NCBI GenBank assembly: GCA_001949185.1
Contig: BDGG01000001.1
Span: 2,869,324 to 2,933,323 of the forward strand
DNA: 64,000 nucleotides
Origin: Ramazzottius varieornatus
Lineage: Eukaryota > Animalia > Tardigrada
Direction of reading: 5' to 3'
Part shown: piece by piece, positions 18,601 through 39,200 of the stretch
How positions within the stretch are numbered: the first letter of the stretch is position 1
How the letters are laid out: every line of letters begins with the position of its first letter
Translations under genes and position numbers: made by a program
The notes under the pieces: model-generated
Databases searched by the model: none
Told to the model about the DNA's origin: nothing
What the model saw: the letters and a program-made list of their open reading frames with translations, nothing else

Positions 18601-21600
18601 GCAGTCAAACACTGGCGGATTTTGTGTGTTTGGTAGGAAGCCCTTAATTGAAATTCAGGATTGGATTTTGAAAATGTTTGCGCGAATGAGATCTGCTGCT
18701 ACAGATTGAATCGTGGTTTGCTTACCGGGTCAGGTTGGCTTCCACACTGCACGTTTTGCGGCCAGTCGCACACAGCCAGGGACTGCAACGTGATCGATCA
18801 AGGCTCTTGCGACCAAGGGTTTTTGTGTGAAAATTTCCTTACGTTGTTGAAGAGCAGAGTCGATGGGCAATCGAACTTCCGTGCTATCCCTTCCGGGCTA
18901 CAGTACACAAACTGTGCGCAGCCAACTTCCTGGAGAGCGTAGTACCCGATCTTTCCACTACAATCGTAGGTGTTGTCCTGTAACGTCAAACCAATTGTAG
19001 CGCGGTGCTGAACAAGGCATAAGAATAATGCGATAGATGTGAATAACCGCTTTTTCGTGCGTCACATGACAATCTCGACTTACAATGCCTAAGCCGGGAT
19101 TAGCGTTTACATCCCCTGTCGTATCGCCAAGGTCTGTGTTCTGATTATAGCCGTCACCAGGGCTGACAGGAACGTAACCGGGGCTTGGACTGTGGCTGTT
19201 TTCGTCACCGGGACCTTCGACAGGAAACGTCGATGGGTATGTTTGAGGTCCTTGGGGGATGTTGTTGGGTCCTTGAGAAAATGTTATGTTGAGGTTGGGC
19301 TGTTGAGCAGGGTTCTGTGGTATGAAGTGGGTGCCTCCCCCACCGCCGCCATAGCTGCTTGGTGGATACTGTCCAGATGGTGTATCCGCTGGTCGACTGG
19401 TAACCGGGACCAGTGGAGGCTGAAATTAAGATCGAAATTAACGCGCAAACAGAAGATTTTCTTGAATAGCGTGGGAAACGAGAACGAAGCTTACGTGGAT
19501 GGATTTTATTTGGTGCGAAATATCTCTTCGGTTGGGAGTATGTGCTTGCGGAAATTTGAATTCAAAATCTGAATTAATATGCTTGAGGTGTTTACCTGGT
19601 AGATTACTTGCGGTTGGCCGCCTCGACATTGCACTTGCTGTGCAAGACCGCAGTCAACGGTAATGGGATTCCAGCGAAGACCTTGCTGACAGGTGTGCAA
19701 GTACGTCACGCGGTTATTGCAAAAGTACGCGGTAGTGCAGTCGGGATCGTTGCCCGCGTACCACCCGTTACGGCCACTGCAGTCAAAGACCTGTTTCCGA
19801 CACACATAAAAATGAGATTAGTGGATGATGCTGATCAGATTCATCGTGTGACATTGTCTCATCTTTCGAATCAAAACCCCATCCATTGATATGACAGGAT
19901 AGCATAACCTACGCTGGAGTCGACTACAGTGCCGTAACAGCGGCTGAGGTCGTTGTCGCAGCTACTGCTCACTTCGTTGAAGGCTTGTCCACTTGGACAG
20001 TGCAGCGTCTGCCCGGAATATCCGCCACCTTGACAGTAATAATAGGTGGAACAGTCGTTGAGGTTGGCGTAAAATCCAGCTGGTCGATTTCGACAGAACG
20101 GTATATTCTAAGGAAGCAAAAATTATTTTGCGGGCTGATTTACAGACATCACAAGAAACATTTCGAAGAACTGTAAATCACACTCACTCCGTTATTATTG
20201 TTGGATAATGTGTTCGAAGGTGGTAATTGAGGGTTGGCGTTATTCGGTGGATAGGTTCCTATGCTTTGTCCACTTCCGCATCGGACTTTCTGAGCGATGT
20301 CACAGCATCCGATGAGCTCGTTGAAGATGAGCCCGTCTAGAAGAGAATCGTTGTGTAGCGGTACTCTGGTACTCCGGCTTCGAGTGGTAATTTCCAGGAG
20401 CTAGGACAGTTTCCTACCTGGACAAGTGAGCTGACGGGAGCGTCCCGATTCTTCACAAAAGTAGAAGACCCGGCAGTTCGACGCGTAGTCGGCGAAGAAA
20501 CCGCGCTTACCCGCACACTGCAAAGATACTCTGTTTAGTTTATGAGGCTAGCATGACCCAACTATCAGCTCCTTTCAGGCTTCATCCATCTTTCGATGGC
20601 TTCGCGGTTTGTACCAGGTAAAGCTAACCTCAATCGCAGGTCGCGGAGTTCCAACGCCGCCGTCCAGAAGACCCGCGCAGTTGACGTCGTGTGGCATCTT
20701 ACAGCATTGCGACGTTTCGTCAAACTGGAAGCTTCCTGGGCAAGTACTCGTAGTGACTGTTCCATCAGCGAAGCAATTGTAGAAGACTTCGCAGTTTCTT
20801 GTTGTGTCGGCCACATAGCCTATCCTTCCTTTGCATATTTCTCTGGACATGAGGGTGTTGCCGCCGGCTCCACTACTACTTGATTGATAGGAGGCGGCAC
20901 TTCCGTAGGCGGCGCTGTTCGGATACGAATTTCCCGAATTCCCATAGGCTGCACTTTGTGTCTGTAAAGAACGGTTACGTAACTGCAAGTTCTTCATGGA
21001 CTCTAATCGGATGTTTTCTTGTGTCTATTTGAGTGCTGAATTGCGCTTTGAGTTTGTCAGGGAAGGCAACTAATCGCGTGAGAGGCGCCGGGAAAATTGC
21101 CTGGATGGCGTTTAGGCTTTCTAAGGTCTGCACATGCTTTATAGACTTCGGAAAACAAACCTACCAACATTGGGAGGCTTTCACTCAGCTGTGGAACAAT
21201 TTCGACCTGTGGAAGCTTTCATACAGCTATGAAAAACCGTGGGGTTTGATTCACAGCTGACATGGCTGGTCTTCCCGATTGTGAGGGTGCCAGCAGGATA
21301 GAGCGGCGCAAGCCACAAGGCGCATAACAGCGACCGTGGTGCTTACTCGTCCGTGAGCCTCACGGCATATGACAATGTACTGCTTAGAGCTGCACAATTG
21401 GTGTTGATAGTAAAATACGCCGAGGATTATCCACAATGCGCATTAGAAAAACGACTCATCCGTACCCGGAAGTCGACTCATACACCCCAGATATCTCCAG
21501 GGTAGGACGACCAGACGGAAGTCAGACAGAGTTCTCGAATTAAGGGTTCTCTAGCTGTTAGACAGGTGGATAAAAGGAGGCCCACCTGTTGCCCGTACAG

Positions 21601-27559: not shown

Positions 27560-29064
27560 TTAACCGATGAAAGCAAAAGGACTGATAAAAGTGTGAGCAA
27601 TACCATTGGCAAAAGTCGGTACAATGCTAAAAAGACCCCCAGCTCCGAACATGTTGCCCATTCCAAGAGCACCCATCATTCCCATTGGGTTCATCATACC
27701 GATACCACTTCCTAGAACAGGTACTGCCGCTTGTTGCACAGGTGCAGACTGAGGCTTGGCTCCCCATCCCGATCGAGCTTGAGGAACGGCTGGTGGAGGA
27801 GTCGTTGTTGGCTTGGCTCCCCAACCGGATTGCTGGCTGCTCGACATGGTCGTTTGTCGGTAGGTGGTGGCCTCCGACTGGCTGGAAGACTGAGACTGGG
27901 CTTGCTGTTGTTGTTGTTGCTGCTGTTGTTGCTGTTGTGCTTCTTGCTGCTGCTGCTTTTGCTGAGAGACTTGTTGGGTCTGCTGAGAGGAAGACGAGGA
28001 GGAGGAGGAGGTCTGTTGTTGGACGGTGCTGGAGATGGGGATGTTGGCGACGACAGGGATCTCCACATCGGTGGTCTCGATCTCGACGGCACTTCCGACT
28101 TCGCTTTCAGGGCGGACGGGGATGACGTTGAGGGTGGCAGCAGCAGCGACGGTCTTCTTGGGTCGACGAGCGCGGAACTTCTTGTTGGGTCGAGCGTTGA
28201 CGGGAATCAGGTTGATGTTGGACAGGTACTGGTTGGAGCTGGTGGAGACGACGGCGCTGGAAGGTGCGGACTGGATGACGACGGGAACGGCCGAGCTGAT
28301 GGCAGTGGCGTGGTTCTTGCAGCAGTCAGTCGGGACCACTCTCATGGCCGAACAGCAGTCGTGAAATGGGACGACGGTGGCGGAAGGACGGCTGGCGATG
28401 TAGACGGGCGAGGCCTGGACTTGTTGGGGCATGGCGACGTAGGTGGTGATGACTTCGGTGGATGGGCGGAAGTTGGCCGAGCATTCGACATCGTGGAACC
28501 ACTTGCAGGTCTGGGCTTGGTCGTCGAAGATGGTATAGTTTGGGCACAAAAACTGCAAAAGGAAAAGTGAATGGATCGGGGCTGGAAAGGAGTGAAATGA
28601 AATGTTTGGAAATTGTTCAGAATCTTGGGCGTGGCTAGGTGGGAAATTCCTTACCGAGCCAGCGATCTCGCCTTTGATGGAACACTTGTGGAAAGCTTGG
28701 CAGCCGGTCTCGGGATCCGCAAAGTAGGAGTCGACAGGAAGAACTTTGGGTGTCTTGCAGGAGAAGCTGGTCACGGGAACTTCACTCAGGATGGGAAAGT
28801 CCCTGAAAGTGCAAGAAATAGCTGATGGGTGTGAGGTCTTTTTGCGCAAACCAACGATCAGTTTAGGTAAAAAATGCAAAGACAGGAAGTTCGACAAGGT
28901 ACTTACACTCCCGGCCTGGCGTGGAGTTGGGCTGCTTCCGCTTGGTCAGCTTCCAGAGGAACCAGGCTGATACTTCGGTAGTCCCTCCTTAGCGTCATGC
29001 TGGATGGAACGTCGACCGCTGCGAGGAACCCGACACAAGATAGTAGAACAGCCGTGGACAGCAT
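27560..29064 (-). CDS. Secreted single-CBM14 protein (CPAP1-like) with V/S/T/Q-rich and Met/Gly-rich C-terminal tail
   Basis: ATG 29064, MLSTAVLLSCVGFLAA signal-like start. Splicing yields PGVDFPILSEVPVTSFSC...YFADPETGCQAFHKC...FLCPNYTIFDDQAQTCKWFHDVEC, the typical CPAP1-type CBM14 context. Stop at 27560. Confidence 0.85.
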
Positions 29065-30215: not shown

Positions 30216-31744
30216 TCAACGCTTCAGGAACACACTCATCACATTACGAAAGACTCTGGGTTTCAATGGCATAATCCTCTGTCGTATCGTGTCAGCATGC
30301 CGTAGTTGCTCCTCATCCCTCATCGAAGAATACCATCTCGGGACCGTAGAAAGTTTCCAATCCACGACGGTCCAGTTGCTGTACCCTAGACTGAAGCTCT
30401 TCGGTGTCGACGGGAAGTTCTTGACGGTCGCGTCTTCCAGAGAAGGCTTCGGCGCACCTTCTGGGATCACGCCTGGCTCCTTGTCCGGTGCGTTGACACG
30501 CAGGTTTCTATATTCTTCATGTCGCAGCGCTTTGCACTGACGAAGACGACAGGTGGATTCTTGTTTGAGCATTCCTCCAGTTCCCCACATTTCATGGTAT
30601 TCGAGTCGTTGGGTTCTCGAAGGGGATTCGTTTAGAGTATTAAGGGAAACTTGTAGGTACCGGAAAGGGGCTAGTCGTACAGTATGTCAGCGCCTCCTAC
30701 AGGATAAACGCTGTGACTCACTGGTAAACACTTTTTTGAGCTTTTGTCCAGTATTTAGGCTCTTGATCGAAGCCGATCTATTTAAATGTATGTTTGAATT
30801 TGTTTAGTGATTTTAGAATGGAACATGCCTGTTTGGGAATTTGGAGACATCCAAGTGTCGAAGATCGTGGTGATGTTTTCCGGTGGCCCATAGGTATCGC
30901 TTTAAGTTTCAACCAACGATCTATCCCATTCGCTACCTTCTTCTTTCACATACTCTATGTACTTCCAGCTGTTTTCAGATGTTGCCACGCTTTGGCGAAG
31001 TAAGGAACTGGCTAACATCCATCATAATGATCCACTCGGTGAGGTTGCGAACGCATGTAGCAGTCGATCATGGCGTTATACTTATTCCAAGCTGTGTCGC
31101 TAGGGTCGCCGTCTGGACCTCGTTGCTCCTTTGGAATAAACTTCGCGGGAACATAATCGATCAGATTGGTAATTTTTTGTCCTTGTGGAACATCGGGAAG
31201 TAAACTACCAACAAAAAGGCAGTGAACTGGGAGCTTGGCGAATAAACTCGTTTTTTCCAAGTGGCGCTCGCTTCCAGCCAGTAGCACCGCAGAAGTGCGC
31301 CACTTGGGTCTTGTCGAGATCGTTTGGTGAACGCCCAATCATACACCGAAGTTCGCAAACAAATCAGTCAGGTAGAATCATCGTACCTGCCAAGTCCATG
31401 CTGCGATAGTCATATAAAGCAAAATGATTTACACCTTGCAGACGGTGATGCTCGATCCACTCGGCCAAGTACGGCGCCTCGTTAAAGACCATCGCGCAAA
31501 CACAGACGTCCCACCGTCGAACCTGGGGTTTAGATCGGACCGGAAGTCGCTCGTCCAGGAGCCGAGTGGTGTACCAGTCGATATGCGGCGTGACGGAACC
31601 CGAATCCGGGTAATCACCACTATCAGGTACAGAGGTATACACAGGTATACTGGCCGAATACGAAAGCAGTAATTTGAAAAAGCAAACGGTGCAGCGTACG
31701 CGCAATACCCGCACCGGTGCTGCCCCGGAAGTCCAGCTTATCAT
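30216..31744 (-). pseudogene. Degenerate glycosyltransferase, family 92 (DUF23)/GT2-like
   Basis: VCVCAMVFNEAPYLAEWIEHHRLQGVNHFALYD is the GT92-type N-terminal motif. AMIDCYMR is followed by a frameshift near 31050 into RNLTEWIIMMDVSQFL (DxDE motif eroded), then an in-frame TGA at 30975-30977. Confidence 0.65.
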
Positions 31745-31833: not shown

Positions 31834-31839
31834 TTTATT
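31834..31839 (-). promoter_or_regulatory. Putative AATAAA polyadenylation signal of the DUF2807 gene
   Basis: tttatt on + ~175 nt downstream of stop 32012. Confidence 0.4.
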
Positions 31840-32011
31840 GCTAACTTTCGATGAGCTTGTAGACATGGACATTTAGCCGGTTTGTGTAAAAAATACTGCT
31901 TCCGGTAAGCGTTGTGATGCGAGATTTAATACAGTAAGCGTTCATACGTGACGTGAAGAACAACACGTGTGGATGTGATTTTCTACCAGATGAGTTCGGT
32001 AGGTGGAAAGA

Positions 32012-32837
32012 CTAGATTGTTCCGGAGGGGAAGACACCTCCGGAGCCGTTAATCTGCTGGCTGACTCTCGGTTGACCGCCGAAACGCACGTCTCCGGATC
32101 CATCGATGTTAACGGTTAATGAGGTGGACGTGTAAACTTCGACATCTCCCGAACCTTGGATGTTGACGTTGGTTTGTTGTGTGCGCAGGTCTCTTCCGTT
32201 GAAGTTGCCCGAGCCGCTAATGTTGATGTTGGCGTTCCTGGCGGTCCCGTTCGTGAAGAAATTCCCCGAGCCACTTATCACGATGTTAAGACCGCTGGCT
32301 TCCATTGGGACCTGCACATCTCCGGATCCACTGATGAGGATCTGGAGATCGCCTGCTTTCAAGAAGGGAGAGAGGCTAATGGGTCCCGAGCCTTGGTTCT
32401 CCAGGTTCGACAAGGCTTTGGCGCTAGCGTAGACATTGATGGGGCCGTTGAAGAATGGGATGGGCTGATTGTACAGAAGGTTTGAAAAACGAACCTGAAA
32501 TAAAAACGAACCCCAAGCAATTTTCAGGGAAATTCCAAGTGATTTGAAATAAAGATAAAAATCCGGAGTTCTGCTCTGGAATGACGATTCTGATTCGTAC
32601 CTGTAGGACCAGTGGGAACCATGGCTCGACCACCGTTTCCACGTATTTGATGATGGTCGGATCAGCTTCGACGCGAACGGCTTCGGTAGTTCCCATTGTG
32701 ATTATAACATTGAAGGGTCCTTTATTTGAGATACTGCGGAACATGGTGACTGGACGGTCTTCTGTTACTCTTTGGCCTCTGCAAGGGGATGCCGAGAACG
32801 CCATCAATATCGCGGACAGAAATAAGGATGTCGCCAT
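32012..32837 (-). CDS. Secreted DUF2807 / head GIN-domain beta-helix protein (bacterial-type), 2 exons, 239 aa
   Basis: Exon 1 32837-32601, intron 32600-32495 (GT..AG, phase 0), exon 2 32494-32012, open reading frame. Signal peptide followed by RVTEDRPVTMFRSISNKGPFNVII...VRVEADPTIIKYVETVV and repeated I-[SQDN]-G-S-G-[DN]-[VF] units ending GQPRVSQQINGSGGV. Confidence 0.85.
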
Positions 32838-33509
32838 GTCGTTCGCAACGTAGGCAGAGGTTTGTAATAATTGTTAACAACGATCAGCTGCAATATTTCG
32901 CATAACTGATGGCTGTATTTTACGGCTTTCAGTGGTGAAAGTCGTCTGGAGGGTTATGCAAGAGGCTGGAAATTCACCTGTACATGGTGGAGACAAGCTT
33001 TGGAACAGTCAGCTGGTGAGACAGACTGATGACCGGAGGCTTCCCTGCCGACCAAAATACATACGGCTTACTGTGGTGGAACCACAAGTGGAACGATTTC
33101 CTTGATCTGTACTTACCGGGTAAGTGTACCGAAGCGTGGTGGCTGCATAAAGCTCTGCCAAAATAGTCTAGCACACGGAAATATCTTCATAGTTGTTGGT
33201 TGTTTACATCGAAATTTTTACACGTCAGCTGAATGAGTCACAACAAAAAACACCGATAGCACCGAATTTAATGAGACGTAAAACGTGAAAGTAGAGGCAG
33301 CAGGAATAAGGCATACAACGTCTGCGAACAATAAAAACCCGTTTGACAGATGGACGATGGTCAGCTGCCGGTCTACACTGCTATAAGATGCCAAAATGAA
33401 AGCAGCCGCTGCAATCATGTTGTCATGTCATGTCGTACTACAGGCGTGTTAGCTGGCATGACAGTACTGAATTTACTGTACGTCCCGCTTCGCCTTTGCG
33501 CATGGCTTC

Positions 33510-34741: not shown

Positions 34742-35081
34742 ATGAAATTCGATGGTGCATCATTTATTTGTCTTGTTATGTTTTCATTATGGCTTTTGGT
34801 GACGTACTCGCATTCGGCTTCCCCTCCTAAAAAGCATCCCGAGAGTGCCTACAGCAAAAGTAAGACCTCAGTGAAGTTAGTTGGTGCACACTACTTTGTA
34901 TGTGCTGATACTGTTTGTAGGTATCCGCAGGATGAGAAGTGGTCTGGCACCAACTTGCAGCATGCGTGCCTGTGGTCCCGGCGACAAGAACGCCTGCGCG
35001 TCGCCTTGTAAGTGCTCGAACCAAAACGAAGCCCGAAGACGAGGAAGGTGCTATGCCAGCATAGGCAGCGGATCGGAATAG
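34742..35081 (+). CDS. Secreted six-cysteine knottin-like prepropeptide (92 aa, 2 exons)
   Basis: Exon 1 34742-34859, intron 34860-34920 (gtaag...ttgtag), exon 2 34921-35081. Signal peptide, propeptide ending RRMR, mature SGLAPTCSMRACGPGDKNACASPCKCSNQNEARRRGRCYASIGSGSE. Confidence 0.75.
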
Positions 35082-36210: not shown

Positions 36211-39200
36211 ATGTCGTTTTTGTTGAACGGCTGGACAGCTATTGTTTTTCTCTGTGTGCTGTTTGGGCATCAGAGAGTCGAATCGGTTCGTGCAAAACTC
36301 AAGGATGACTTTCGTGTCACGTCTTTTCCCATGCTCATTATCTTCCGCTGTTTGTAGCAAAACCGACATGTGCTGCCCACTGGTTCCGAAAACCTTGCTG
36401 GGCTTTCTGGATTGTCCGGACTGGACGTGGGAATACTACGGGAAATTGCGGCAGCGTTGAATATTCCAGGTCTGTCACAATCGCCCACCGAATATGCACC
36501 ATCCGCCAACGTCAACCCTACTCAAGCTACCTACTACCAGTCAGCACCTCAAACCGGCACACAGACCGACACCATCATGTTTTCCGGAGGGATGGTCTCA
36601 CCATCATGTACCGGGAAGGGAGGGTTCTTCCCTGATTACACGCAGGGTTGTCGCGTATACTACCGGTGCTCACCCGATGGCAGAATGGCGCGGTTCGAAT
36701 GTCCACTGAATTACATCTTCTCGGAACAGCTGAAAAAGTGTGACGTCCCGGAAGTGGTAACGTGTGGTGTGAATAGTCAGAAGACCGTTCAGGCTCCGTT
36801 CGTCAACCACCAGAGCACTCATTCCGGAGGAGTCCCGCAAGCTTGGCCCACGCTGACGCACAACGAGAATGGCGGAGGGTTCTACGAAAGCCTTCTGGGA
36901 GCGGTTACTGAACGAGTCGAAGGCTTTGGTCACCCAGCCATTAAAATAATGGTACTGTTCTTCCATTTTGTCAGAACCTGAGTATTGTGGAAAGCAGAAA
37001 TGCTTCTTTGTAGGGAGACCCAAATGCGGCACTTGATATGGACCCAATGATCTGCTATGGTCGGCCGAACATGTACATTGCCGATCCCGATACGGGGTGC
37101 CGTGGATATATCAAATGTGCGGCATCGCCTGCTACCCCATTCCAGACTTTCATCTGTCCATCGGGAATGCGCTTCGATGTGAAGTCCGAACAGTGCCTAC
37201 CTCGGGGACAAGTACGCTGCGCCGACGTCGAGCCGTTGCTACCGGTGAGTCCAACCAATCTAAATTCTTAAGGCCAGCCTCATTCCGATCCACAGGTTGG
37301 TACGACAAACTGTTACCTGCTTGTTCACCGACGAAGTACAGTATTTAAAACTTCACGACCTTATTTATTTATCTGAGAGCTTTGCAGACAGTTCGGACAA
37401 GATCGTTCTCCCAAGTGGCGCACGATTTCAGCGTTGGTGGTCGGAAGTGTGCGCCACCTGGCAAACAATCTTGTCAAGTCTGCTCGCCTTGGTTCCACAT
37501 ATTACCACACAACTGTTTTATCATTTTCACTTTCAGCCTGGATTTGGACTGGCGGGTGTGGGTGCCGGTGCCGGCTTCGACATAGTTCCTCGTTCAGGAC
37601 TGGTGAACCCTCGTTTGACAACAATAGCAGCTGCCACGATGTCTCAATCAAAGCAAGTCGGTGGTCCATGTCACGGTAAAACGGGTTTCGTTCCCGATTA
37701 CCAGCAACAATGTCAGGTGAAACACATCATCCGTCTTATTCACTTCACTGTTGAATACCCAAGAATGATTAATTATTTTTGAAGGGGTTTACCATTTTAG
37801 GTCTATTTCTACTGCAATGCCGATGGAACTAGCCTGAACTTGACATGTCCAGCGGAAATGGTCTTCAATCCGGCCCTACAAAGCTGTGACTTCTTCCAAA
37901 CGGCACCTGAATGTCGTGCACCAATGCCCACTCCGCAAAAGATGAAACCGGTTGAGCAGGCTGCCGCTAAACCTCATGACCCATCTAAGACACTCGTGCT
38001 GACCATGACTAACGAACAACTGGCGCGAACTGTCACCTCGCCGCCAGTCCTACAGGTGGCGTCCTCCAAGAGATCGAACCCTGGCGTCGACGTCAAGTAC
38101 GCCCGAAAGACACCGTCTCTCCTCACCATGGAACATCCCAACGACGCAGTCCGACAAAGCCCATACGACCTCAGACCCAAGCTTTCGCCGCAGTCGAATC
38201 CGACTATGAACACTGCTTTCCTTGAAGGCTTTCTTACTCCCGATATGCTGCTCCCAATGCGCCCAGAAGGGCAAAGCAATAATATCAATACTGGCAAACC
38301 GGCCAAGAACAGGCCAGCAGTACTTCCGCTACATTCGGTACACTCGATGCAGCCGAAACATCCTGTTCCTATCCAGCCCGCAGTGGACAATGGTCCGCGC
38401 CGTCATTATCCTCCTGCTGCAGGCTCCACGGTACCTGCCACCATGTATGAAGTAGAGTGCGATGGAAGTCAGGGATACTTCATCGAACCAGAGTCTGGCT
38501 GCCGGTAAAAGGATCTGGATAGCATTGATAAATGTAGATAACATAAACGAATATTTCCACCACAGGATATTTCACTTCTGTCATCCTAACATGACGCTGG
38601 ACACCTACTCATGTCCACCAACAGAAGTCTTCGTAATCCGATTCAAGTCATGCGTACCTCAAGGTGCCGCCATCTGTATCGATCCGGTGTCTAACGACGC
38701 ACGGGATGCCATGCAGCGCGTATGGAGTTCTCCTGTGGCCCCAGCTGCTCCAGCCGGTCCCCAACTAACATCAACGGTACGTTTGAGAAGATTCTAAAGT
38801 TACTTCAAGGACCCCTTCTGGCTTACCTATCACCCACTGACCCTTTCACTGTTAACAGTAAACGGGAGGGCGGCAATAGAAATGTGCAAGATCGTTCTCT
38901 CTAGTGGCGCACTGTTCTGTTGATTGTGCCTGAAAGCGTGCGTCCCTTAAAGTAACGATGCAAGACGTTTCGCCGACTAAAACTTAATGATTGCAGTTCG
39001 CTGTGTAGACGGCGCCACTCTGGACCGGTTATGTAACGAACTCACTAATGGTTGCCACGTGCGCGTATGCCACGCAGTGTGGTCGCTGATCCTTATGGGA
39101 CACGCTAATTTTCCTTTCATCTCCCACTGAGTTGATTGTTGCAGGTACTTCCCCTTGATGTGTCGACAGGAGAGACGGGAGCTCAGTCGACCTCGGCGCC

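What the first reader, a model, noticed from the sequence alone, without database searches (positions are those of the whole stretch)
32012..32837. Bacterial-type DUF2807/GIN beta-helix gene domesticated with a spliceosomal intron inside an animal chitin-matrix locus
Seen: an intact 239-aa ORF split by one 106-nt GT-AG phase-0 intron, with a signal peptide, a downstream AATAAA and a TCAGTT Inr-like motif at ~32904-32909. It is flanked by animal genes. Established: the I-S-G-S-G-D-V repeat architecture and ~240-aa size are typical of DUF2807 (putative autotransporter adhesin head GIN domain), which is abundant in Bacteroidetes and not a standard metazoan family. Inference: a horizontally acquired, secreted beta-solenoid repurposed for the cuticle or gut matrix (adhesion, polysaccharide or ice/surface binding). 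The predicted cleavage CRG|Q also resembles the Gln-after-signal pattern of Bacteroidetes secreted proteins.
Basis: partly seen in the sequence, partly recalled or inferred. Interest (0 to 1): 0.9.

Follow-up and report, generated by a model that had tools for sequence, protein, structure and literature searches.

The report
Bacterial beta-helix gene in tardigrade genome
This is a real, intron-bearing tardigrade gene (Ramazzottius varieornatus RvY_01030) for a secreted beta-helix protein of the bacterial DUF2807 family, acquired long ago from soil Bacteroidota, and a 2017 supplementary table already lists it as a horizontal transfer, so only its function remains open.

Summary
A minus-strand two-exon gene (exon 1 32837-32601, 106-nt GT-AG phase-0 intron, exon 2 32494-32012) encodes 239 aa. 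Its exons match Pfam DUF2807 at profile positions 2-40 and 57-181 (exon 2 E 4e-33). It is identical to GenBank RvY_01030 of the tardigrade Ramazzottius varieornatus.

It is not contamination. It lies on a 9.3-Mb scaffold, 270 bp from a GT92 gene, inside the genome's largest chitin-binding (CBM_14) cluster, and its base composition is host-like.

The genome has two more intact paralogues and one decayed fragment. Hypsibius exemplaris has an orthologue at 51% identity. In a careful ML tree all 11 tardigrade-type sequences form one clade (97/95). That clade joins sequences whose named members are all Sphingobacteriaceae (85/95). This points to one old transfer followed by triplication.

The AlphaFold model (pLDDT 93) superposes on Bacteroides DUF2807 crystal structures (TM 0.82-0.90) and not on ice-binding proteins.

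The transfer is already published. Yoshida et al. 2017 (PLoS Biol, S4 Data) list all three DUF2807 genes as high-likelihood HGTs. The cuticle, gut and ice-binding ideas have no support beyond gene neighbourhood.

The parts
32601..32837 (-). Exon 1 (79 codons). It holds the start ATG at 32837-32835, the signal peptide and the first strands of the DUF2807 domain.
   Evidence: Pfam profile 2-40, E 6.9e-5. Equal to P0001 residues 1-79.
32775..32837 (-). Coding region for the predicted signal peptide (residues 1-21, MATSLFLSAILMAFSASPCRG, followed by Q22).
   Evidence: Hydrophobicity profile. Low pLDDT and a helix at 8-14 in the model, with the domain starting at residue 24. Positionally aligned with the bacterial signal peptides ending in A-Q. 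The cleavage site is inferred.
32495..32600 (-). Spliceosomal intron: 106 nt, GT...AG, phase 0, 37% GC, single copy in the genome.
   Evidence: Read-through breaks the frame. The junction matches the GenBank model and the gap-free homologue P0002.
32012..32494 (-). Exon 2 (160 codons plus TAG at 32014-32012). It encodes the beta-helix body with the repeated SGSG turns.
   Evidence: Pfam profile 57-181, E 4.2e-33, 115 bits. Equal to P0001 residues 80-239.
31925..31930 (-). ATTAAA, a candidate polyadenylation signal 81 nt after the stop.
   Evidence: Seen in sequence only; no 3'-end reads.
31834..31839 (-). AATAAA, a candidate polyadenylation signal 172 nt after the stop.
   Evidence: Seen in sequence only.
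32904..32909 (-). TCAGTT motif 67 nt upstream of the ATG. It is present but not statistically meaningful.
   Evidence: 38 matches in the window against 45.5 expected.
31364..31744 (-). First coding exon of the downstream neighbour, a glycosyltransferase family 92 gene (context, not part of the gene).
   Evidence: PF01697, E 1.7e-8.
20575..20997 (-). Nearest strong CBM_14 (peritrophin-A chitin-binding) exon on the low-coordinate side (context).
36370..36981 (+). Nearest CBM_14 exon on the high-coordinate side (context).

Best explanation
**Identity.** The gene is RvY_01030 of the tardigrade Ramazzottius varieornatus. It is a genuine nuclear gene that descends from a bacterial DUF2807 ('head GIN' / Toastrack) gene.

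**History.** A Sphingobacteriaceae-like soil Bacteroidota gene entered an ancestor of Ramazzottius and Hypsibius once. It then duplicated into three lineages, RvY_01030, RvY_12128 and RvY_14593, and left one decayed copy. The copies took on host base composition and acquired introns at different places.

**Product.** The gene makes a roughly 218-aa secreted, soluble, single-domain right-handed beta-helix. It has no membrane anchor and no recognisable catalytic domain. The N-terminal signal peptide is positionally inherited from the bacterial one, including the Gln that follows it.

**Shown here.** Gene structure, family membership, fold, physical integration in the host genome, single origin, and bacterial affinity.

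**Inferred.** Splicing and secretion in vivo. Also a role as an extracellular binding or adhesive module, by analogy with the one tested family member, Porphyromonas gingivalis PGN_1547, which is needed for biofilm formation and cell attachment. I put that functional reading at about 35%. The target (microbial surfaces, polysaccharide or matrix) is unknown.
For: - Structure and family.
- Identity to RvY_01030 on a 9.33-Mb scaffold, and a 51% orthologue, BV898_04518, on a 744-kb Hypsibius exemplaris scaffold.
- Three intact loci plus one fragment in this genome.
- Introns differ among paralogues. RvY_01030 has one after residue 79. RvY_14593 has one GC-AG intron near profile position 131. RvY_12128 has none.
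- Host-like composition. Exons are 50-53% GC with GC3 0.56-0.66, like the neighbouring genes. The intron and flanks are 37-44% GC.
- Eukaryotic neighbours.
- Nearest relatives are all bacterial apart from tardigrade-type sequences.
- Careful IQ-TREE. The tardigrade clade has support 97/95 and is monophyletic in 96% of bootstrap trees. It joins 41 rows whose 12 named members are all Sphingobacteriaceae, with support 85/95.
- Fold. pLDDT 93. Best match 3pet, TM 0.82/0.90, rmsd 1.6 A over 218 columns. PDB sequence hits 3jx8, 3lyc, 3ljy, 3pet, 4opw.
- Signal-peptide homology.
- Published support. Yoshida et al. 2017 (PMC5531438) S4 Data lists bHd17574.1 with homologue RvY_01030.1. Its best metazoan hit is 38.1 bits and its best bacterial hit is 95.5 bits (9SPHI). 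[quoted passage not shown]
- R. varieornatus gene models were built from RNA-seq of six states merged with ab initio models (PMC5034306).
- Adhesin phenotype of PGN_1547: PMC10949514.
- Toastrack definition and 'sporadic in eukaryotes': bioRxiv 10.1101/2020.09.24.301986.
Against: - I could lay no RNA reads on the junction.
- Six of the 11 'tardigrade-type' sequences are unnamed metagenome or Logan proteins. I assign them to tardigrades only because they fall within the clade.
- Support for nesting among Sphingobacteriaceae is moderate (UFBoot 85). The bacterial rows were chosen from the best hits, which biases sampling. The tree is unrooted.
- No evidence bears on the function in the animal. 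The bacterial family itself is poorly characterised.
- The H. exemplaris locus could not be fetched. Synteny and its intron count (0 in S4 Data) are unchecked.
Confidence: 0.85

Rival explanations
1. The three tardigrade DUF2807 genes come from two or three separate transfers from related Bacteroidota, not from one transfer followed by duplication.
For: - The published per-gene RAxML trees place each H. dujardini gene singly among different bacterial neighbours.
- The paralogues are only about 30% identical to one another.
- They sit on three different scaffolds.
Against: - When analysed together they form one clade with support 97/95, monophyletic in 96% of bootstrap trees. FastTree and quick IQ-TREE agree.
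- The published trees each held only one tardigrade sequence, so they could not test this.
Confidence: 0.08
2. The gene is an ancient eukaryotic or metazoan gene inherited vertically and lost almost everywhere else. Its similarity to Bacteroidota reflects slow evolution, not transfer.
For: - The Toastrack superfamily is described as sporadic in eukaryotes.
- The gene has an intron, host composition and a eukaryote-compatible signal peptide.
Against: - No named metazoan or other eukaryotic protein appears among the best hits of four searches.
- The best metazoan hit in Yoshida S4 Data is 38 bits.
- The clade is nested with one bacterial family.
- Intron positions differ among paralogues and between species, as expected for recent gains in an originally intronless gene.
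Confidence: 0.04
3. The locus is a bacterial contaminant or a misassembly, and the intron is an artefact of gene prediction.
For: - Tardigrade genomes have a history of contamination-driven HGT claims (introduction of PMC5034306).
- Gene finders are built to place introns.
Against: - The gene lies on a 9.33-Mb scaffold.
- A GT92 exon starts 270 bp downstream and CBM_14 genes lie on both sides.
- The non-coding flanks are AT-rich and the coding composition is host-like.
- Without the intron the DUF2807 domain is split by a frameshift.
- Orthologues exist in a second species and assembly.
Confidence: 0.02

Closest known systems
Stand-alone DUF2807 / 'head GIN domain' proteins of Bacteroidota, especially Sphingobacteriaceae (Mucilaginibacter, Pedobacter, Sphingobacterium). 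Solved examples: 3PET, 3LJY, 3LYC, 3JX8, 4OPW.
   Same: - Similar length (about 230-245 aa).
- Same layout: signal peptide, Gln, (E/T)TR-V-S-F motif, then a beta-helix with SGSG turns.
- 33-38% sequence identity.
- Same fold (TM 0.82-0.90).
   Different: - Encoded in an animal nucleus.
- Interrupted by a spliceosomal intron.
- Host codon composition.
- Fewer canonical SGSG-type turns by a simple motif count (3 against 7 in a Mucilaginibacter homologue).
- Acidic mature protein (pI about 5.1 against 8.1 in that homologue).
- Three N-glycosylation sequons.
The DUF2807 HGT candidates of Yoshida et al. 2017 (PLoS Biol 15:e2002266, S4 Data): bHd17574.1/RvY_01030.1, bHd17075.1/RvY_12128.1 and bHd07466.1/RvY_14593.1.
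   Same: This is the same gene and the same conclusion: prokaryotic origin, expressed, retained in both species.
   Different: - The paper lists them only in a supplementary table and treats each gene on its own.
- Added here: the single-clade result, the fourth decayed copy, differing intron positions, the structural model, the inherited signal-peptide layout, and the position inside the CBM_14 cluster.
Porphyromonas gingivalis PGN_1547 (DUF2807 adhesin, mSystems 2024, PMC10949514).
   Same: Same Pfam family. It is the only member I found with a tested phenotype (biofilm formation, attachment to host cells).
   Different: - It is a bacterial surface protein of an oral pathogen.
- Its homology to the tardigrade protein is distant and was not aligned here.
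- Its phenotype may not carry over to a secreted animal protein.
Toastrack domains of the LiaF, LiaG and PspC envelope-stress systems (DUF2154/DUF4097/DUF2807).
   Same: Same beta-helix superfamily. Structure-based Atlas neighbours include LiaI-LiaF-TM fusions.
   Different: The tardigrade protein has no transmembrane segment, and no PspC or LiaI-LiaF-TM partner is fused to it (the paralogues' flanks showed none either). It belongs to the stand-alone secreted type.

Membership tests
DUF2807 / head GIN domain (Pfam PF10988; Toastrack superfamily) | Sequence match to the Pfam model above the gathering score (24.2 bits). | tested here: met
   Exon 2 alone scores 115.1 bits, E 4.2e-33, on profile 57-181. 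Exon 1 scores 23.1 bits on profile 2-40.
DUF2807 / head GIN domain (Pfam PF10988; Toastrack superfamily) | [quoted passage not shown] | tested here: met
   AF2 model pLDDT 93.1. Foldseek gives 3pet_A E 4e-13, TM 0.82/0.90, rmsd 1.6 A; 4opw, 3ljy, 3lyc and 3jx8 give TM 0.72-0.78.
DUF2807 / head GIN domain (Pfam PF10988; Toastrack superfamily) | Periodic (S/T)G(S/T)G turn motifs along the helix. | tested here: met
   ISGSGD, ISGSGN, ISGSGN, QGSGD, DGSGD and NGSGG are read directly in exon 2. G/S columns are invariant in the 120-row alignment.
Bona fide horizontally acquired gene in an animal genome | Physical linkage to undoubted host genes on a long assembly. | tested here: met
   9.33-Mb scaffold. 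GT92, MFS_1_like and CBM_14 neighbours. Not checked with long reads.
Bona fide horizontally acquired gene in an animal genome | Phylogenetic nesting inside the donor group. | tested here: met
   The tardigrade clade (97/95) joins Sphingobacteriaceae-type rows (85/95) within wider Bacteroidota. Support is moderate, the tree is unrooted, and sampling was hit-biased.
Bona fide horizontally acquired gene in an animal genome | Absence from other animals. | tested here: inconclusive
   No named non-tardigrade eukaryote appears among the best hits. The best metazoan hit is 38 bits in published S4 Data. Most database hits carry no taxon name.
Bona fide horizontally acquired gene in an animal genome | Retention in related species and expression. 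| tested here: inconclusive
   The orthologue in H. exemplaris was found here. Expression comes only from the literature ('hiexp' for the H. dujardini orthologue).
Trimeric autotransporter adhesin (the source of the 'head GIN' name) | C-terminal beta-barrel membrane anchor and coiled-coil stalk. | tested here: not met
   The protein is 239 aa with one domain covering residues 24-235. No other Pfam domain was found. It is not a TAA.
Ice-binding beta-solenoid proteins (DUF3494 / IBP-1 type) | Structural similarity to solved ice-binding proteins. | tested here: not met
   The best ice-binding entries (9lhr, 3uyu, 6bg8, 3vn3) score probability 0.1 or less and TM 0.11-0.23.
Chitin-binding matrix proteins (CBM_14 peritrophin-A) | Presence of a CBM_14 domain. 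| tested here: not met
   No CBM_14 match in either exon. Only the neighbouring genes carry it.

The most novel reading that the evidence does not exclude
The DUF2807 family was captured once from a moss or soil Sphingobacteriaceae bacterium and kept its bacterial export signal. After triplication it became a tardigrade-specific set of secreted binding proteins. One copy, RvY_01030, was recruited into the chitin-based extracellular matrix programme. That would explain why it sits in the 16-kb gap of the genome's largest CBM_14 cluster. Its differing introns would then be datable, lineage-specific intron gains in a gene known to have started intronless.
Probability: 0.12. Interest if true: 0.5.

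Novelty: already known. Interest (0 to 1): 0.25.

Why it matters
Claims of horizontal transfer into tardigrades have been disputed, so well-documented cases are useful reference points. This one has linkage to host genes, an intron, host composition, orthologues in two species, and paralogues forming a single clade.

Because the ancestral gene had no introns, every intron in the three paralogues is a gain. The intron counts differ between Ramazzottius and Hypsibius orthologues (1/0, 0/1, 1/0). That gives a small natural experiment on intron gain.

The function of a secreted bacterial adhesin-like beta-helix in an animal is unknown and testable. The core finding is not new, however, and nothing here links the gene to tardigrade stress tolerance.

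Tried and rejected
- **Fetching the H. exemplaris locus.** Synteny, the orthologue's intron status and the P0002 contig could not be examined.
- **Named bacterial loci.** With a single Mucilaginibacter protein it returned only that protein's own locus. Its neighbours (AHSA1-like and unknowns) said nothing about function.
- **Metagenome scans.** Two scans of metagenome contigs, for group-A relatives and for P0275, found nothing.
- **Literature.** Full-text searches for RvY_01030, the accession numbers, 'DUF2807 + tardigrade' and 'GIN domain + tardigrade' were blank. The gene appears only in a supplement. Supplements of Hashimoto et al. 2016 are not held.
- **Single-sequence AlphaFold.** It gave a poor model (pLDDT 57.5) and was replaced by the alignment-based run.
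- **Introner hypothesis.** Rejected. The intron plus its exon edges has only its own match in the genome.
- **TCAGTT as initiator evidence.** Rejected as chance level.
- **Ice binding.** Rejected on fold comparison.
- **A family-wide link to chitin genes.** Rejected. The paralogues' 20-kb surroundings showed no CBM_14, and no CBM_14 matches lie near them.

Full report
**1. What is in the sequence**

The gene reads on the minus strand:
- The ATG is at 32837.
- Exon 1 runs to 32601 (79 codons).
- The intron is 106 nt (32600-32495), begins GTACGA, ends in a pyrimidine-rich tract plus CAG, and is 37% GC.
- Exon 2 runs from 32494 to the TAG at 32014-32012 (160 codons).

The intron is needed. Read-through shifts the frame and ends at 32424.

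Exon 1 matches Pfam DUF2807 (PF10988) at profile positions 2-40 (E 6.9e-5). Exon 2 matches positions 57-181 (E 4.2e-33, 115 bits).

For whole-length analyses I used the database protein P0001, which the exon-2 search returned. A script confirmed that its residues 1-79 and 80-239 equal the two exon translations. That same script counted stop codons over alternative donor and acceptor pairs in memory.

Twelve in-frame GT..AG pairs exist nearby. The 106-nt pair is the one used in the GenBank model. It is also the one that keeps a gap-free alignment with the independent 79%-identical protein P0002.

Other sequence features:
- The TCAGTT at 32909-32904 exists but is at chance frequency.
- ATTAAA (31930-31925) and AATAAA (31839-31834) follow the stop.

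**2. Whose gene it is**

P0001 is GAU88304.1, 'hypothetical protein RvY_01030' of the tardigrade Ramazzottius varieornatus, on a 9.33-Mb scaffold. The window is C1:2869324-2933323 of a 55.8-Mb assembly.

The neighbourhood is eukaryotic:
- A glycosyltransferase-92 exon starts 270 bp downstream (31744-31364).
- An MFS_1_like gene lies at about 25-26.7 kb.
- CBM_14 chitin-binding genes lie on both sides.
- Genome-wide, 27 of the 80 CBM_14 matches fall in this window and two more just beyond it. The gene sits in a roughly 16-kb gap between a minus-strand and a plus-strand CBM_14 array.

Composition is host-like. Exon GC is 50-53% and GC3 is 0.56-0.66, like the neighbouring genes. The intron and flanks are 37-44% GC. 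Contamination or misassembly is very unlikely, although I could not check long reads.

**3. A small family, not a singleton**

The genome holds two further intact DUF2807 genes and one decayed copy:
- RvY_12128 on C7 has an intronless CDS and is 241 aa.
- RvY_14593 on C10 is 250 aa, with one intron near profile position 131. The annotated protein requires a GC-AG intron.
- A decayed fragment with two in-frame TAA codons and a frame change lies at C1:9199366-9199602.

All three intact proteins begin with a hydrophobic signal-like segment.

Hypsibius exemplaris has an orthologue of RvY_01030, BV898_04518, at 51% identity on a 744-kb scaffold.

Seven unnamed metagenome or Logan proteins fall in the same clade: P0002, P0121, P0125, P0180, P0275, P0276 and P0347. 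One of them, P0276, is a near-copy of RvY_12128.

**4. Origin**

Every other close relative is bacterial and mostly Bacteroidota. This holds in the word-indexed search, in the exhaustive representative search (21,616 hits at E 0.001 or better) and in the ESM Atlas.

I ran a careful IQ-TREE analysis (LG+C20+F+G4 PMSF, 94 rows, 243 columns). The rows left out were those over 300 aa or under 190 aa, plus random thinning of the 375-row FastTree set. The results were:
- The 11 tardigrade-type rows form one clade with UFBoot 97 and SH-aLRT 95. They are monophyletic in 96% of bootstrap trees.
- This clade joins 41 rows whose 12 named members are all Sphingobacteriaceae (Mucilaginibacter, Pedobacter, Sphingobacterium, Olivibacter, Pararcticibacter), with support 85/95.
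- Other Bacteroidota, Ignavibacteriales and Betaproteobacteria lie further out.

FastTree on 375 rows agrees.

The simplest history is one transfer from a Sphingobacteriaceae-like soil bacterium before the Ramazzottius-Hypsibius split, followed by two duplications.

Caveats: the tree is unrooted, the bacterial rows were drawn from the best hits, and nesting support is moderate.

**5. Already published**

Yoshida et al. 2017 (PLoS Biol 15:e2002266, PMC5531438) list three H. dujardini genes in S4 Data:

| H. dujardini gene | R. varieornatus homologue | Intron count in H. dujardini |
|---|---|---|
| bHd17574.1 | RvY_01030.1 | 0 |
| bHd17075.1 | RvY_12128.1 | 1 |
| bHd07466.1 | RvY_14593.1 | 0 |

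- All three are annotated DUF2807 and classed 'prokaryotes', 'hiexp' and 'Phylogeny_and_expression_and_perdurance'.
- Their best hits are Sphingobacteriia proteins.
- For bHd17574.1 the best metazoan hit is 38.1 bits and the best bacterial hit is 95.5 bits.
- The per-gene trees each contain one tardigrade sequence, so the single-origin result is an addition made here.

Compared with the R. varieornatus genes (1, 0 and 1 introns), the intron count differs for every orthologous pair. Because the ancestor was an intronless bacterial gene, these are lineage-specific gains, or gains followed by loss. I could not verify the Hypsibius gene structures.

The RvY_01030 intron is single-copy, so it is not an introner-type element.

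No paper discusses these genes in its main text.

**6. The protein**

With a 120-row alignment, AlphaFold2 gives pLDDT 93.1 and pTM 0.86. Residues 1-20 are of low confidence, with a short helix typical of a signal peptide. Residues 24-235 form an all-beta solenoid.

Foldseek against the PDB puts the Bacteroides and Parabacteroides DUF2807 structures first. 3pet scores TM 0.82/0.90 with rmsd 1.6 A. 3ljy, 3lyc, 3jx8 and 4opw score TM 0.72-0.78. Ice-binding proteins score probability 0.1 or less and TM 0.23 or less. Sequence hits to the same PDB entries agree.

The protein has no second domain, no C-terminal hydrophobic tail and three N-X-S/T sequons. Its mature pI is about 5.1.

It is not a trimeric autotransporter, despite the Pfam name.

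The N-terminal layout is aligned between tardigrade and Sphingobacteriaceae proteins: a hydrophobic segment, then Gln, then (E/T)TR-V-S-F. The export signal therefore appears to have been inherited, not newly invented. The Gln recalls the Bacteroidetes 'Q-rule' of signal peptidase I substrates. That rule is from my own knowledge and was not tested here.

**7. How it most likely works**

Shown: the gene encodes a secretory-pathway-type, soluble Toastrack/DUF2807 beta-helix of bacterial descent, conserved in two tardigrade genera in three copies.

Inferred: it is exported and acts outside the cell as a binding or adhesive surface. The only tested family member I found, P. gingivalis PGN_1547, is needed for biofilm formation and attachment to host cells (PMC10949514). 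The wider Toastrack superfamily is coupled to envelope-stress sensors. I give the binding-module reading about 35%. I have no evidence for the ligand.

The position in the CBM_14 cluster is striking. The cluster covers about 0.1% of the genome.

**8. Verdict**

The functional speculation is unsupported, and for ice binding it is contradicted by fold comparison. The finding is already known from a 2017 supplementary table and from UniProt's automatic naming.

The increments here are:
- the single origin with triplication and one dead copy;
- intron positions that differ among paralogues and between species;
- the inherited signal-peptide layout;
- a confident structural model;
- the genomic setting.

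Noticed in passing
window 6600-64000 (C1:2875944-2933777): The window holds the genome's largest cluster of CBM_14 (peritrophin-A chitin-binding) domains. 27 of 80 genome-wide matches lie in it and 2 more just past the window end. All matches left of about 20.8 kb are on the minus strand and all right of about 36.6 kb are on the plus strand, so the two arrays are divergent around a 16-kb gap.
   Followed up: partly
L003:1425-1505 (G000:C10, gene RvY_14593): The paralogue's single intron appears to be GC-AG (exon ends ...AAT GTC GTG | GCAAGT...TTGCAG | GTG AGT GGC). The GenBank protein (NANVVVSGSG) and the repeat register both require the GC donor and not the nearby GT.
   Followed up: partly
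L004:1325-1737 (G000:C1:9199190-9199602): A decayed fourth DUF2807 copy. It is about 32% identical to RvY_12128 over 76 codons, with two in-frame TAA codons and a frame change, so it is probably a pseudogene.
   Followed up: partly
window 27560-28897 (-): A long open frame with a partial, weak CBM_14 match (E 1e-3), a long poly-Gln/Ser tract and a Gly/Met-rich tail. It looks like a low-complexity matrix protein.
   Followed up: no
window 31364-31744 (-): A glycosyltransferase family 92 gene begins only 270 bp downstream of the DUF2807 stop, on the same strand, with an N-terminal hydrophobic anchor. The tight spacing leaves little room for separate 3' and 5' control regions.
   Followed up: no
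window 34742-35081: Another first-stage note (s1-790011) flags a two-exon knottin-like prepropeptide here, about 1.9 kb upstream of the DUF2807 gene. I did not examine it.
   Followed up: no
L008:1950-3356 (G000:C10:1504949-1506355, -): A GatB (Glu-tRNA amidotransferase subunit B) open frame of 469 aa without interruption lies about 6.5 kb from the RvY_14593 paralogue. It is presumably the mitochondrial enzyme's nuclear gene.
   Followed up: no
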